The notes beneath the pieces were generated by a model that saw only the letters and a list, made by a program, of their open reading frames with translations, was not told where the DNA came from and made no database searches. The translations under genes were made by a program, and so were the position numbers. Positions 31,961 to 34,537 of a stretch of DNA of 39,575 bases are shown here, piece after piece. Every line of letters starts with the position of its first letter. Within the stretch, counting starts at the first letter, position 1. Source of the DNA: Neoconidiobolus thromboides FSU 785 (taxonomy: Eukaryota > Fungi > Entomophthoromycota); NCBI GenBank assembly GCA_025603075.1, contig MU626434.1, positions 1 through 39,575 on the forward strand, written 5' to 3'.

Positions 31961-32644
31961 TTATAATAAAAAGTATAAACTAGAAATAAGTAATAAAAAT
32001 TGAGAGCTGACCAATGTGGTGGAAGAGCTACCCTTTGCGCCATCTTTACCAGAAGAGCCTTTGGTAGCTTCGTCCTTTGAAAGAAGTTTGAAAGAAGCTG
32101 GTGGGTATTTGGGGTCTTTAGGATCAGTCCAATTGAGCCATTGGTTATTTTCACATAATTGGGAAGCCTTGAAGTAAAAAGTATTATTTTTTTCTTTAGG
32201 TAAAGCAGAAAGAGATGGAAGCTTGAAAGAGAGAGGGAAATCAGCAAACATGTTATAAGGTATCTTTCCATCTGAATAAACAACAGCGATAGTTTGACCT
32301 TTTGGCTCACTATGACCATCTGCTTTATTGTCAGTTGGCTTTTGATCATCTTTTTTGGGTGCATCATCTCTTCTTTCAACCTTTTTCTCTTCGGCTTTTG
32401 GTTTTATTTTAATTTCAGCTTTCCAACCTGCCACTATACCTGCAGAGAATTCAGTCTTAAGATCAAGGACGTCTTGATCAAACTCAATGATTACTTTGAC
32501 AGTATCTGACTTATCACAACCATGAGGAATACGGATACTAGTACTGGCGTAAGTTCCTTCAACACCTTGATTTGGGCTAACAGTTACGTGGGAGTTCACC
32601 AAGAGTGGTAATGCAGCAATAGCTAAAGTACAAAGGAATTTCAT
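31961..32644 (-). CDS. YcnI/DUF1775-like secreted copper-binding protein with GPI-like tail, paralog A (227 aa)
   Basis: Signal peptide ending VNS then HVTVSP; IRIPHGCD..DTVKV; GWK; VVY..G; F...FKLP; YFKASQLC...W....PPASF; Ser/Gly stretch plus hydrophobic C-terminus; intronless. Confidence 0.8.
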   Translation of the reverse strand: MKFLCTLAIAALPLLVNSHVTVSPNQGVEGTYASTSIRIPHGCDKSDTVKVIIEFDQDVLDLKTEFSAGIVAGWKAEIKIKPKAEEKKVERRDDAPKKDDQKPTDNKADGHSEPKGQTIAVVYSDGKIPYNMFADFPLSFKLPSLSALPKEKNNTFYFKASQLCENNQWLNWTDPKDPKYPPASFKLLSKDEATKGSSGKDGAKGSSSTTLVSSQFLLLISSLYFLL

Positions 32645-32701
32645 TATTAAATGATTTAAATTAAATCCTAAAAGATAATAAATTACCTTCGGTTTCCTCT
32701 G

Positions 32702-32709
32702 TATTTATA
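32702..32709 (-). promoter_or_regulatory. Candidate TATA box of paralog A
   Basis: TATAAATA 58 bp upstream of the ATG; paralog B has the same 8-mer at a similar distance. AT-rich background limits significance. Confidence 0.4.
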
Positions 32710-32990
32710 TATATCTTTCCTATGATATCACAAGCTAGAATAATACATTTAGTGTCAATTCATCTCATGTTTTTCTAGAAAAAAAGAATAAACTTAATCC
32801 TTCCATGATTTGATTGATTTCTAAAACTGTTCAATTTACGATATGTCATAGTTCTTTTTGAAAATAGCCAACCTTTGCTGTTATTCTTAGAAATTGAAAT
32901 AAAACGAATTCTTAACAAATATATTTGGTTTTAACGAAAATATACTAAATTTAATTCATTTAATGTAAATATTTATATTAATTTAACAGA

Positions 32991-33734
32991 TTAAAGTAAA
33001 GAGTATAAAACAGTGGCAAGTAATAAGGCTGGGGAGCCATATACTAAAGATGAGGAACTACCTTTTGCACCATCTTTACCAGCACTCTTAGCAAGAACTT
33101 TGAAAGCTGGTGGTGGGTATTTAGGGTCTTTAGGATCAGTCCAGTTGAGCCATTGGTTATTTTCACATAACTGAGAAGCTCTGAAGTAAAGGGTAGAATT
33201 TGCTTCTTTTGGTAAAGCAGAAAGAGATGGAAGTTTGAAAGAGATAGGGAAATCAAGGAAAAGATCAGCAGGTACTTTACCTCCTGAATAGATAATCTTA
33301 GTGACTGGACCTTTCTTTTCAACTGGTTTAGTTTCATCTTTCTTATCAGTAGGTTTAGGATCATCTTTCTTATCAGTGGTTTTTGTGGCATCCTTAGTTT
33401 CGGATGATTTGACTTCAGTTGTTTTGATCTCATCCTTCTTTCCTTCAGTACTATCGCCATGTCTTCTTTCTAATTTCTTTTCGACTGGGGCAGTTACAAG
33501 CTCAGTAGACCAACCATTAACATAACCAGCAGAAAAAGGAGTTTTGAGATCAATGAGGACTTGATCAAACTCAATTACTAATTTAACAGTGCTGGAACCA
33601 TCACAACCATGGGGAATACGAAGATTAGCGCTTTGGTAACCTTCTTCAACACCCTCTTTTGGAGATACAGTAACGTGGGAGTTGACTAAGAATGGAAGTA
33701 AAGTAGCAGCAAGAGTAGCAAAAGTAAATTTCAT
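32991..33734 (-). CDS. YcnI/DUF1775-like secreted copper-binding protein with GPI-like tail, paralog B (247 aa)
   Basis: Same architecture as paralog A (VNS-HVTVSP, RIPHGCDG, FKLPSLSALPKE, SQLCENNQWLNWTDPKDPKYPP) with a longer Lys/Asp/Thr-rich insert; tandem, 346 bp from paralog A. Confidence 0.8.
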   Translation of the reverse strand: MKFTFATLAATLLPFLVNSHVTVSPKEGVEEGYQSANLRIPHGCDGSSTVKLVIEFDQVLIDLKTPFSAGYVNGWSTELVTAPVEKKLERRHGDSTEGKKDEIKTTEVKSSETKDATKTTDKKDDPKPTDKKDETKPVEKKGPVTKIIYSGGKVPADLFLDFPISFKLPSLSALPKEANSTLYFRASQLCENNQWLNWTDPKDPKYPPPAFKVLAKSAGKDGAKGSSSSLVYGSPALLLATVLYSLL

Positions 33735-33796
33735 TATGTAAGAAATATATGAGAGTCCTAGTAAAAAGGTGAGGTAAAGTGGATCGATCTAGTTTC

Positions 33797-33804
33797 TATT
33801 TATA
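33797..33804 (-). promoter_or_regulatory. Candidate TATA box of paralog B
   Basis: TATAAATA 63 bp upstream of the ATG. Confidence 0.4.
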
Positions 33805-34537
33805 CTTTTCAGAACTAGTAACATGGGTTACAGTTTTGTTTGTGTTAATTTAAATGTTCTATACTTTTTTAAATAAATAAAAATTCTAAATTTAGTAAGC
33901 TTCTGGCACCTTCTTTTTGAACCAATTTATTCTTCGCTTCTTATTAACCCACTTTGTAAAATTAATTACCCTGATTTAATCAACCTTTTATGGGCCTATG
34001 TATCAAGTTTGTAGTAGTATAAGCTATCATAACTACGTTATTTATACTATTTGCCATATTTTGAATGCTATGTGAAATAGTATTGTATTTATAATTAGAT
34101 ATTACATTTCTCAAGTTGATTTATAAACAAGATTAGAAAATATTAGAAAAATATTTAGAATTTTTTCTTCTTAAATTAGCATCAGTCATTCTTCACAATC
34201 AATTAGTAGAAGCATTATTCCTTCGAGAAAGTTCCAATCAAATTTCTTTAACTATTCTACATTGATCTTGGTTAATATATAGTATTAAAAAAAATTATAT
34301 GTAAATCTCTTAATTATCCTTTATTTGATTTTGAAATCATGGGGTTTATATGTGACCTTCTAGAAGGATTTTTAAGAAAAAAGAACGGATCATTCAACTA
34401 AAATTATAATTCTAAGTACCCATCCTTGATTTATTCTTAAAGAAACCTTGAATAAATATAAATTTTTGTAAATTAAGTGGATACAAATTTACAATCATAT
34501 ATCCGATGTTAGTTTAGCATTCTCGAATGTACCATAT

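What the first reader, a model, noticed from the sequence alone, without database searches (positions are those of the whole stretch)
31961..33734. Tandem bacterial-type YcnI/DUF1775 His-brace proteins converted to GPI-like fungal surface proteins
Seen: two intronless paralogs, each with a signal peptide whose predicted cleavage (V-N-S/H) exposes an N-terminal His, a PHGC motif giving a second His, a conserved late Trp (QLC...W...PP), and a Ser/Gly spacer plus hydrophobic tail instead of a bacterial membrane anchor. Established: YcnI of Bacillus subtilis binds Cu(II) through its N-terminal His plus a nearby residue and Trp, works with the YcnJ importer, and the family is mainly bacterial; fungal GPI-anchored His-brace proteins (Bim1/X325) use a different, LPMO-like fold. 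Inference: a horizontally acquired, duplicated cell-surface copper capture or buffering system convergent with Bim1, potentially relevant to host copper stress. No YcnJ/CopCD partner is visible here.
Basis: partly seen in the sequence, partly recalled or inferred. Interest (0 to 1): 0.8.

Follow-up and report, generated by a model that had tools for sequence, protein, structure and literature searches.

The report
Fungal surface copper-binding YcnI gene pair
Two neighbouring genes of the insect-pathogenic fungus Neoconidiobolus thromboides encode cell-surface versions of the bacterial copper-binding protein YcnI; they are not a recent bacterial import but belong to an old, unstudied fungal branch of that family, which in three other fungi lies beside copper-importer genes.

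Summary
Two intact head-to-tail genes on the minus strand (31961-32644, 227 aa; 32991-33734, 247 aa; 56% identical) match Pfam DUF1775/YcnI (E 2e-21 and 8e-24). The predicted fold matches YcnI crystal structures. Both have a signal peptide ending just before a His, a PHGC motif, a conserved Cys pair and Trp, and a GPI-like tail.

Recent horizontal transfer is not supported. The closest relatives are all early-diverging fungi (Entomophthorales, Zoopagomycota, Mucoromycota, chytrids, Blastocladiomycota) plus an oomycete, and all share the His start and GPI-like tail. Subclades follow taxonomy, and composition and codon use match neighbouring genes. The GPI "conversion" is therefore an old trait of the whole clade. 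The tree alone cannot exclude a bacterial placement of the pair.

New here: in Synchytrium, Calcarisporiella and Mortierella the homologue lies beside a Ctr copper importer. In the first two it also lies beside a DOMON (in Calcarisporiella DOMON/cytochrome b561) reductase-type gene. This supports a capture, reduce, import role, analogous to Bim1 with Ctr1. The window itself holds no such partner.

The second His is unproven as a ligand, because B. subtilis YcnI uses a Glu there. RNA-library contigs cover both genes and do not support the annotated 75-nt intron.

The scan also noted a third copy elsewhere in this genome.

The parts
32991..33734 (-). Paralog B gene, 247 aa, YcnI/DUF1775-family protein (upstream copy)
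   Evidence: ORF. Pfam PF07987 E 7.8e-24. Identical to database protein P0001. AF2 model matches YcnI and 3ESM. Covered by RNA-library contigs.
31961..32644 (-). Paralog A gene, 227 aa, YcnI/DUF1775-family protein (downstream copy)
   Evidence: ORF. Pfam PF07987 E 2.2e-21. 56% identical to B. 39-40% identical to the Massospora cicadina homologue. High depth in RNA-library contigs.
33675..33734 (-). B: signal peptide (residues 1-19, ending V-N-S) plus the His20 codon (33675-33677), the predicted mature N-terminus
   Evidence: Hydrophobic core with mean KD 1.9. V at -3 and S at -1, read from the sequence. His20 is invariant in 30 eukaryotic homologues and aligns with residue 1 of mature YcnI.
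32588..32644 (-). A: signal peptide (residues 1-18) plus the His19 codon (32588-32590)
   Evidence: Same reasoning as for B.
33603..33614 (-). B: PHGC motif (P41 H42 G43 C44). His42 is the candidate second ligand; Cys44 is the candidate disulfide partner of Cys190.
   Evidence: H42 is invariant and C44 nearly invariant in the eukaryotic alignment. The motif occupies the place of Ser49-Glu50 of B. subtilis YcnI. HGC and the later QxC co-occur in 104 of 115 sequences, whereas the Glu class lacks QxC in 29 of 30.
32516..32527 (-). A: PHGC motif (P40 H41 G42 C43)
33141..33167 (-). B: Cys190 to Trp198 (C-E-N-N-Q-W-L-N-W). Trp198 is the equivalent of YcnI Trp137 and lies in an N-W-T sequon.
   Evidence: W198 is invariant and C190 nearly invariant in 30 eukaryotic homologues. 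The Trp137 role in YcnI is from PMC8424229.
32129..32155 (-). A: Cys164 to Trp172, the same element
33309..33485 (-). B: Lys/Glu/Asp/Thr/Pro-rich loop (about residues 84-142) inserted between two strands of the domain. It holds a 27-nt (9-aa) tandem repeat and a KKLERR motif.
   Evidence: About 45 residues longer than in other fungi. pLDDT 49-60, no secondary structure. Repeats D3/D4 at 27-nt spacing.
32297..32401 (-). A: shorter charged loop (about residues 82-116) with KKVERR. 32306-32380 is the in-frame 75 nt that NCBI's model removes as an intron.
   Evidence: P0002 compared with the ORF. RNA-library contigs cover 32204-32369 at the depth of the flanks, with no joints.
32994..33062 (-). 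B: GPI-attachment-like signal. Small-residue stretch K-G-S-S-S-S, short spacer, 12-residue hydrophobic end.
   Evidence: Tail KD 2.32, no basic residues. The same architecture occurs in all full-length named eukaryotic homologues, whereas bacterial ones end in a TM helix plus R/K or in soluble His-rich tails. No dedicated GPI predictor was available.
31964..32032 (-). A: GPI-attachment-like signal
   Evidence: Tail KD 2.50.
32645..32990 (-). Intergenic region and promoter of A, with a TATAAATA box at about 32702-32709
   Evidence: Read from the sequence. Depth near zero in two of three RNA libraries. No Mac1-type CuRE.
33735..33900 (-). Promoter region of B, with a TATAAATA box at about 33797-33804
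   Evidence: Read from the sequence. No Mac1-type CuRE.

Best explanation
The two genes are a lineage-specific tandem duplicate of an old eukaryotic branch of the YcnI/DUF1775 copper-binding family. That branch is mostly found in early-diverging fungi.

Proposed mechanism:
- Each protein enters the secretory pathway.
- Signal-peptide cleavage after V-N-S leaves His as residue 1.
- A C-terminal GPI signal tethers the Ig/cupredoxin-like domain to the plasma membrane or cell wall.
- The N-terminal amine and imidazole bind one Cu(II). The invariant PHGC His probably takes the place of YcnI's Glu50, and the invariant Trp stacks over the metal. A Cys44-Cys190 disulfide holds the site together.
- The bound Cu(II) is handed to the reductive uptake route: a surface reductase, then a Ctr Cu(I) importer. 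This makes the protein the analogue in early-diverging fungi of Dikarya's Bim1/X325.

Shown: family membership, fold, conservation of the site residues, architecture, presence in RNA libraries, wide fungal distribution, and Ctr/DOMON neighbours in three other fungi.

Inferred: cleavage site, GPI anchoring, copper binding, the ligand role of the second His, the disulfide, and the direction of copper flow.
For: - Family: Pfam DUF1775 E 2e-21 and 8e-24. Profile hits to 3ESM (1e-10) and YcnI 7ME6 (1.5e-8).
- Fold: AF2 model pLDDT 80. Foldseek's six best PDB chains are 3ESM and YcnI, TM by target 0.75-0.86.
- Site residues: H20, H42, W198 invariant, and C44, C190 nearly invariant, in 30 eukaryotic homologues. 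HGC co-occurs with QxC and excludes the Glu motif. The Saprolegnia homologue lost both Cys together.
- YcnI chemistry: Cu(II) through the N-terminal His, Glu50 and Trp137, Kd about 2 nM; membrane tethering is needed in vivo.
- Distribution: 24 named eukaryotic relatives, all early-diverging fungi or Saprolegnia, all with the same architecture. ESM Atlas has a eukaryote-only YncI cluster of 92 members.
- Neighbours: a Ctr gene next to the homologue in Synchytrium, Calcarisporiella and Mortierella. DOMON or DOMON/cytochrome b561 next to it in the first two. ZIP next to it in Syncephalis. Pfam checked here.
- DOMON-b561 proteins reduce Cu(II) (PMC10784544). Bim1 works with Ctr1 (PMC7924993).
- Both paralogs are intact, with dN/dS about 0.4, and are deeply covered in RNA libraries.
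Against: - The window has no Ctr, DOMON or ZIP gene.
- Seven other homologue loci show no such neighbour, although two of them could not be judged: Massospora has no gene calls and Backusella lies at a contig end.
- No Mac1-type copper-response element lies upstream.
- No copper-dependent expression data exist.
- The pair sits on a long branch and carries a large charged insertion, so its role may have drifted.
- Glu50, a YcnI ligand, is absent, and no PHGC-class structure exists.
- GPI anchoring rests on rule-of-thumb reading only.
- YcnI's own direction of action (uptake accessory or chaperone) is still debated in bacteria.
Confidence: 0.6

Rival explanations
1. One reading: a recent horizontal transfer of a bacterial ycnI into this fungus, followed by duplication and local replacement of the membrane anchor by a GPI signal.
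For: - The family is overwhelmingly bacterial.
- In the careful tree the pair sits on a long branch next to an unnamed, bacterial-looking sequence, P0026 (94/75).
- The AU test does not reject holding the pair with the bacterial cluster (p 0.37).
Against: - The eight best hits are all fungal. Massospora scores E 4e-34, against 1e-10 for the best bacterial-looking hit.
- A GPI-like tail, and in most relatives many N-glycosylation sequons (the window pair has two each), are shared with the fungal homologues and not with bacterial ones.
- The window pair shares a loop insertion with Massospora, Calcarisporiella and Mucorales.
- Holding the pair with Entomophthorales costs only 1.7 lnL (p 0.47). 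Holding all eukaryotes as one clade costs 0.07 lnL.
- GC, GC3 and RSCU equal those of neighbouring genes.
- A third copy in the same genome groups with Massospora and Conidiobolus.
Confidence: 0.05
2. The protein binds copper at the surface, but its job is to buffer or sequester excess copper (for example against host or environmental copper), not to feed uptake.
For: - Same site and architecture as above.
- High apparent expression and several gene copies suit a stoichiometric sink.
- The Asp/Glu/His-containing charged loops could add weak metal binding.
- No importer gene lies nearby in this window.
Against: - One high-affinity site per protein is a poor sink.
- The conserved neighbours in other fungi are importers and a reductase type, not exporters or metallothioneins.
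- The bacterial ycnI mutant phenotype appears under copper limitation.
Confidence: 0.2
3. It is a copper-dependent redox protein: an electron-transfer partner of the DOMON/b561 protein, or an oxidase acting on wall or cuticle polymers.
For: - If His42 binds copper, the site would be a full histidine brace, as in LPMOs.
- It neighbours DOMON/CDH-type cytochrome genes, which are known LPMO electron donors in other settings.
- The review PMC10952591 lists electron transfer as an open possibility for YcnI.
Against: - No LPMO or X325 structure appears among the significant fold matches.
- No catalytic activity is known for any DUF1775 protein.
- The small Ig-like domain shows no obvious substrate surface (inference).
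Confidence: 0.08
4. It is a structural or adhesive GPI wall protein that has kept the Ig-like fold but no longer uses metal.
For: - Long branch and a large disordered charged insertion inside the domain.
- Loss of the Ctr/DOMON neighbourhood.
- More distant fold matches are cohesins, adhesins and pilins.
Against: - All site residues (His1, PHGC, Cys pair, Trp) are intact in both paralogs, under purifying selection with dN/dS about 0.4.
Confidence: 0.07

Closest known systems
YcnI of Bacillus subtilis (DUF1775, PF07987; PDB 7ME6/7MEK/8UM6) and the Nocardia farcinica homologue 3ESM
   Same: - Same Pfam family and same fold.
- Signal peptide followed by an N-terminal His aligned to His27.
- Conserved Trp equivalent to Trp137.
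- Extracellular domain tethered to the membrane at its C-terminus.
- Relatives are encoded next to a copper importer.
   Different: - Eukaryotic host.
- Glu50 ligand replaced by a PHGC motif plus a Cys pair. Many bacterial members share this subclass, but none of them has a solved structure.
- GPI-like signal instead of a TM helix.
- N-glycosylation sequons.
- A 35-60-residue charged loop inserted in the domain.
- In relatives the partner genes are Ctr and DOMON/b561, not CopC-CopD (YcnJ) or PCuAC. No partner lies in this window.
Bim1 / X325 LPMO-like GPI-anchored copper proteins of Dikarya (e.g. Cryptococcus neoformans Bim1, Laetisaria LaX325 6IBJ)
   Same: - Fungal and secreted, with an N-terminal His copper site.
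- GPI-type tether.
- Proposed to serve Ctr-dependent copper uptake.
   Different: - Unrelated fold: no LPMO or X325 structure appears among the significant fold matches.
- Different taxonomic range: Dikarya, against early-diverging fungi among the named hits here.
- Bim1's role is shown by genetics; this one is inferred.
Unstudied eukaryotic 'YncI copper-binding domain-containing' proteins (Massospora cicadina KAI0219288, Conidiobolus coronatus KXN70832, Calcarisporiella, Mortierella, Synchytrium, Saprolegnia and others)
   Same: - Direct homologues with the same architecture.
- C. coronatus also has a tandem pair.
   Different: - The window pair has the longest charged loop, a second Trp three residues before the conserved one, and no metal-transport neighbour.
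- These proteins are named automatically only. No paper on them was found.

Membership tests
YcnI / DUF1775 (PF07987) | Match to the family HMM above the curated threshold | tested here: met
   77.2 and 85.1 bits against a cut-off of 25.
YcnI / DUF1775 (PF07987) | Ig/cupredoxin-like beta-sandwich fold of YcnI | tested here: met
   AF2 pLDDT 80. Top Foldseek PDB hits are 3ESM and 7ME6/7MEK/8UM6, E 5e-8 to 3e-7, TM by target 0.75-0.86.
YcnI / DUF1775 (PF07987) | His as first residue of the mature protein (after the signal peptide) | tested here: inconclusive
   His19/His20 follows a signal-peptide-like segment obeying the -3/-1 rule and aligns with residue 1 of mature YcnI. Actual cleavage cannot be tested with these tools.
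YcnI / DUF1775 (PF07987) | Glu50-type carboxylate ligand (mono-histidine brace) | tested here: not met
   The position is occupied by H-G of PHGC. The proteins belong to the Glu-less, His+Trp subclass described in PMC8424229.
YcnI / DUF1775 (PF07987) | Conserved Trp over the metal site (Trp137) | tested here: met
   W198 (B) and W172 (A) are invariant in 30 eukaryotic homologues.
YcnI / DUF1775 (PF07987) | C-terminal transmembrane helix anchor | tested here: not met
   A hydrophobic C-terminus of 12 residues with no following basic residues, preceded by a G/S stretch. It is GPI-like, as in all full-length named eukaryotic homologues.
YcnI / DUF1775 (PF07987) | Gene neighbourhood with CopC/CopD (YcnJ) or PCuAC | tested here: not met
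   The window's neighbours are COG3, XendoU, MFE-2 and an ABCB transporter. Eukaryotic relatives sit next to Ctr and DOMON/b561 instead.
YcnI / DUF1775 (PF07987) | 1:1 Cu(II) binding | not testable with these tools
   Needs ITC, EPR or a crystal structure.
Bim1 / X325 LPMO-like proteins | LPMO-like fold | tested here: not met
   No LPMO or X325 chain among the PDB matches with E below 1e-3. Pfam gives DUF1775 only.
Bim1 / X325 LPMO-like proteins | Functional link to a Ctr importer | tested here: inconclusive
   No Ctr gene in the window. A Ctr gene is adjacent to homologues in 3 of 10 other loci. No genetics available.
GPI-anchored fungal surface proteins | N-terminal signal peptide plus C-terminal signal (small omega residues, polar spacer, hydrophobic end) | tested here: inconclusive
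   The features are present by inspection and hydropathy. No GPI predictor or experiment was available.

The most novel reading that the evidence does not exclude
Early-diverging fungi (and some oomycetes) may use a three-part copper-uptake module:
- a GPI-anchored YcnI-type Cu(II) receptor;
- a DOMON/cytochrome b561 cupric reductase;
- a Ctr Cu(I) channel.

This module is still encoded as a gene cluster in Synchytrium and Calcarisporiella. It would be the eukaryotic counterpart of bacterial YcnI-YcnJ. In Dikarya it would have been replaced by Bim1/X325 and Fre reductases. In this module the PHGC His would turn YcnI's mono-histidine brace into a full histidine brace.
Probability: 0.35. Interest if true: 0.8.

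Novelty: new variant of a known kind. Interest (0 to 1): 0.62.

Why it matters
- Copper capture at the fungal surface is known only from Bim1/X325 in Dikarya. How chytrids, Mucoromycota and Zoopagomycota collect Cu(II) before Ctr import is not described. These groups include insect, amphibian, plant and human pathogens.
- A conserved, GPI-tethered YcnI-type protein clustered with Ctr and a DOMON/b561 reductase gives a concrete, testable candidate for this step.
- It extends a 'bacterial' copper-protein family into eukaryotes.
- It offers the PHGC subclass as a possible new full histidine-brace site on a non-LPMO fold.
- For this window specifically, it corrects the recent-HGT story and one gene model.

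Tried and rejected
- NCBIfam scan: nothing meaningful.
- PDB sequence search with the two-paralog profile: no hit. It worked only after two bacterial homologues were added.
- Word-index homologue searches were insensitive or saturated. The exhaustive HMMER search was needed.
- Mac1-type CuRE (TTTGCKCR): one match in the window, none upstream of either gene, and fewer than chance.
- AU test to exclude a bacterial placement of the pair: not rejected, p 0.37. The case against recent HGT therefore rests on hit ranking, shared architecture and indels, composition and the third paralog, not on the tree alone.
- Search for a YcnI-DOMON fusion protein suggested by AFDB hit A0A507DG15: not retrieved. 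It may be a merged model of adjacent genes.
- Metagenome scan: the first try had no usable pattern. The second returned bacterial contigs or eukaryotic contigs too short to show neighbours, with no further Ctr or DOMON.
- tblastx of Ctr, DOMON and ZIP genes against the window and the other loci: no hidden partner.
Full report
**What is there.** The window is a complete 39,575-bp contig of Neoconidiobolus thromboides FSU 785. NCBI's protein for one of the two genes carries that name and sits on a contig of exactly this length. Its other genes are ordinary eukaryotic ones: COG3, XendoU, peroxisomal MFE-2 and an ABCB transporter. The contig is therefore fungal, not a contaminant.

On the minus strand lie two head-to-tail ORFs. 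Paralog B is at 32991-33734 (247 aa). Paralog A lies 346 bp downstream at 31961-32644 (227 aa). They are 56% identical. No third copy or fragment is in the window.

Both match Pfam DUF1775 (PF07987) far above threshold. A profile that includes two bacterial homologues finds the only solved members, 3ESM and B. subtilis YcnI. An AlphaFold2 model built on 30 eukaryotic homologues has mean pLDDT 80. Its six best PDB matches are those same structures, with TM by target 0.75-0.86.

**The metal site.** In B. subtilis YcnI, Cu(II) is held by the amine and imidazole of the N-terminal His27, by Glu50 and by water, with Trp137 stacked on it (PMC8424229).

- His20 of B (His19 of A) aligns with residue 1 of the mature crystal chain.
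- Trp198 of B (Trp172 of A) is the invariant Trp of the eukaryotic alignment.
- Glu50 is missing. Its place is taken by H-G of the PHGC motif.

The proteins thus belong to the 'His and Trp but no Glu' subclass that the YcnI authors left open. Across 170 collected family members, HGC co-occurs with a later QxC (104 of 115), while the Glu class lacks QxC (29 of 30). The Saprolegnia homologue has lost both Cys together. This fits a Cys44-Cys190 disulfide and a His that substitutes for the Glu ligand. Both points remain inferences, because no PHGC-class structure is solved and I could not read model coordinates.

**Anchor and loop.** Bacterial relatives end in a TM helix followed by Arg/Lys, or in soluble His-rich tails. 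All full-length named eukaryotic relatives, and both window proteins, end in a short hydrophobic stretch with no basic residue, preceded by a Ser/Gly/Ala/Thr-rich stretch. Most of the relatives also carry many N-x-S/T sequons; the window pair has two each. That is the layout of a GPI-attachment signal, but no predictor was available.

Peculiar to the window pair is a charged, disordered loop inserted between two strands. It spans about 59 residues in B and 35 in A, with pLDDT 49-60. In B it has grown by 27-nt tandem repeats. Both loops keep a KK(V/L)ERR motif.

**Expression and gene model.** Contigs of three RNA-type libraries from a slightly different strain cover both genes at word depths of hundreds to thousands. 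Depth in the intergenic spacer is about zero in two of the three.

NCBI's model of A removes 75 in-frame nucleotides (32306-32380) as an intron. That stretch is present at the depth of its flanks, and no joint was reported, so the 227-aa ORF is the better model. The caveat is that these are assembler contigs, not reads.

Between the paralogs the domain has dS of about 0.63 and dN/dS of about 0.40. The duplication is therefore not recent, and both copies are under purifying selection.

**Origin.** An exhaustive HMMER search of 1.84 billion representatives gave 182 hits. The best hits are, in order: Massospora cicadina (E 4e-34), Calcarisporiella, Hyaloraphidium (a three-domain protein), Mortierella, a third N. 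thromboides copy on another contig, Syncephalis and Conidiobolus coronatus.

Further named relatives are:
- Basidiobolus and Tieghemiomyces;
- Umbelopsis and four Mucorales;
- six chytrid genera;
- Allomyces and Blastocladiella;
- the oomycete Saprolegnia.

No Dikarya appeared among the 24 named ones. This is an observation, not proof of absence. ESM Atlas likewise holds a eukaryote-only 'YncI copper-binding' cluster of 92 members, mostly Mucoromycota.

In a careful ML tree all eukaryotic rows lie on one side, and their subclades follow taxonomy:

| Subclade | Support (UFBoot / SH-aLRT) |
|---|---|
| Mucorales + Umbelopsis | 100/96 |
| chytrids | 99/95 |
| Conidiobolus + Massospora + N. thromboides copy C | 94/92 |

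The window pair is a long branch. AU tests gave:

| Constraint | lnL cost | p (AU) |
|---|---|---|
| Pair held with Entomophthorales | 1.7 | 0.47 |
| All eukaryotes as one clade | 0.07 | 0.50 |
| Pair held with the bacteria | 7.3 | 0.37 |

The third constraint is not rejected, so the tree alone is weak. Other evidence carries the conclusion:
- hit ranking;
- the shared GPI-type tail;
- a shared insertion before the L-Y-F strand;
- native GC, GC3 and codon use;
- the third copy's placement.

An ancient transfer from bacteria into an early eukaryote or fungal ancestor remains plausible but is not shown.

**Function.** The window holds no copper gene. Homologues elsewhere do have such neighbours:

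| Species | Arrangement |
|---|---|
| Synchytrium microbalum | Ctr (divergent, 228 bp away), YcnI-like, DOMON/CDH-cytochrome (162 bp away) |
| Calcarisporiella thermophila | Ctr, three small genes, YcnI-like, DOMON + CDH-cyt + cytochrome b561 |
| Mortierella claussenii | Ctr (plus a second Ctr-like gene) about 2 kb upstream of YcnI-like |
| Syncephalis fuscata | divergent ZIP metal transporter next to YcnI-like |

I confirmed these domains by Pfam on the ORFs. The Ctr genes are mutually homologous, as are the two DOMON genes.

Seven other loci showed no partner: the window, C. coronatus, Hyaloraphidium, Saprolegnia, Phlyctochytrium, Backusella (at a contig end) and Massospora (no gene calls).

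As a rough estimate from general knowledge, a fungal genome has a handful of Ctr genes among thousands of genes. Three adjacencies in ten loci, across the chytrid-Mucoromycota split, are then far beyond chance. If the arrangement is inherited, its retention argues for selection.

DOMON-b561 proteins reduce Cu(II) as well as Fe(III) (PMC10784544). Bim1 works with Ctr1 (PMC7924993). In B. subtilis, YcnI needs its copper site and membrane tether and exchanges Cu(II) with the importer's CopC domain (PMC12362106).

The most economical model is therefore: Cu(II) capture by the tethered YcnI-type domain, then reduction, then Cu(I) import by Ctr. For the window pair this is inference by homology. Its long branch, inserted loop and lack of partners leave room for drift toward buffering or another role.

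**Novelty.** Databases already auto-name fungal members: 'DUF1775-domain-containing' and 'YncI copper-binding domain-containing'. I found no paper that discusses eukaryotic members. The family papers describe it as bacterial.

The window's genes are thus members of an unstudied eukaryotic variant of a known family. The Ctr-YcnI-DOMON neighbourhood appears to be a new observation.

The scan's own notes record another YcnI-like gene elsewhere in this genome. That agrees with the third copy I found independently.

Noticed in passing
window 32365-32389 and 33458-33482 (KKVERR / KKLERR codons): Both charged loops keep a K-K-(V/L)-E-R-R motif while the rest of the loop has diverged. It is a dibasic, Kex2-like site. 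In B, cleavage after R-R would expose another His (H-G-D), and the two halves could stay joined by the proposed Cys44-Cys190 disulfide. In A the next residue is Asp.
   Followed up: partly
window 33141-33146 (B) and 32129-32134 (A): The conserved site Trp lies inside an N-W-T glycosylation sequon. About 11 of 30 eukaryotic homologues have N-W-T here. A glycan next to the metal site would be unusual.
   Followed up: no
window 33311-33371: A 27-nt (9-aa, P-T-D-K-K-D-x-x-K-like) tandem repeat inside B's loop, with one related copy in A at 32323-32356. The loop has grown by repeat expansion.
   Followed up: partly
window 32306-32380: NCBI's gene model of paralog A (202 aa) removes an in-frame 75-nt GT..AG 'intron' that RNA-library contigs retain at full depth. 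This is probably an annotation artefact.
   Followed up: yes
L008 6531-10602; L007 3454-10770; L006 521-6395: A Ctr copper transporter, a YcnI-like gene and a DOMON or DOMON/cytochrome b561 gene lie together in Synchytrium microbalum and Calcarisporiella thermophila. One Ctr gene plus a second Ctr-like gene lie upstream of the YcnI-like gene in Mortierella claussenii.
   Followed up: yes
L012 4977-8609: In Syncephalis fuscata the YcnI-like gene is transcribed divergently from a ZIP-family metal transporter.
   Followed up: partly
L005 7467-12211: Hyaloraphidium curvatum has a protein with three tandem YcnI domains and one GPI-like tail (P0007, 529 aa), next to a single-domain copy on the opposite strand.
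   Followed up: partly
L004 10001-12566: Conidiobolus coronatus also carries a same-strand tandem pair of YcnI-like genes (203 and 209 aa) about 1.3 kb apart. Tandem duplication of this gene recurs in Entomophthoromycotina.
   Followed up: partly
AFDB cluster representative A0A507DG15: A 616-aa 'DOMON domain-containing protein' whose residues 1-226 match the YcnI-like model (E 2e-11). It is either a real YcnI-DOMON fusion or a merged model of adjacent genes, as in Synchytrium. The sequence could not be fetched.
   Followed up: partly
P0164 / L027 and L026 (marine metagenome contigs, GC about 0.52): Eukaryote-looking YcnI homologues with a type-I TM helix instead of a GPI tail. P0164/L027 also carries a His/Met-rich juxtamembrane stretch reminiscent of Ctr ectodomains.
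   Followed up: no
P0081 / L009 8001-8591: The Saprolegnia parasitica homologue sits among the fungal sequences and has lost both conserved Cys. This may be a fungus-oomycete transfer.
   Followed up: no
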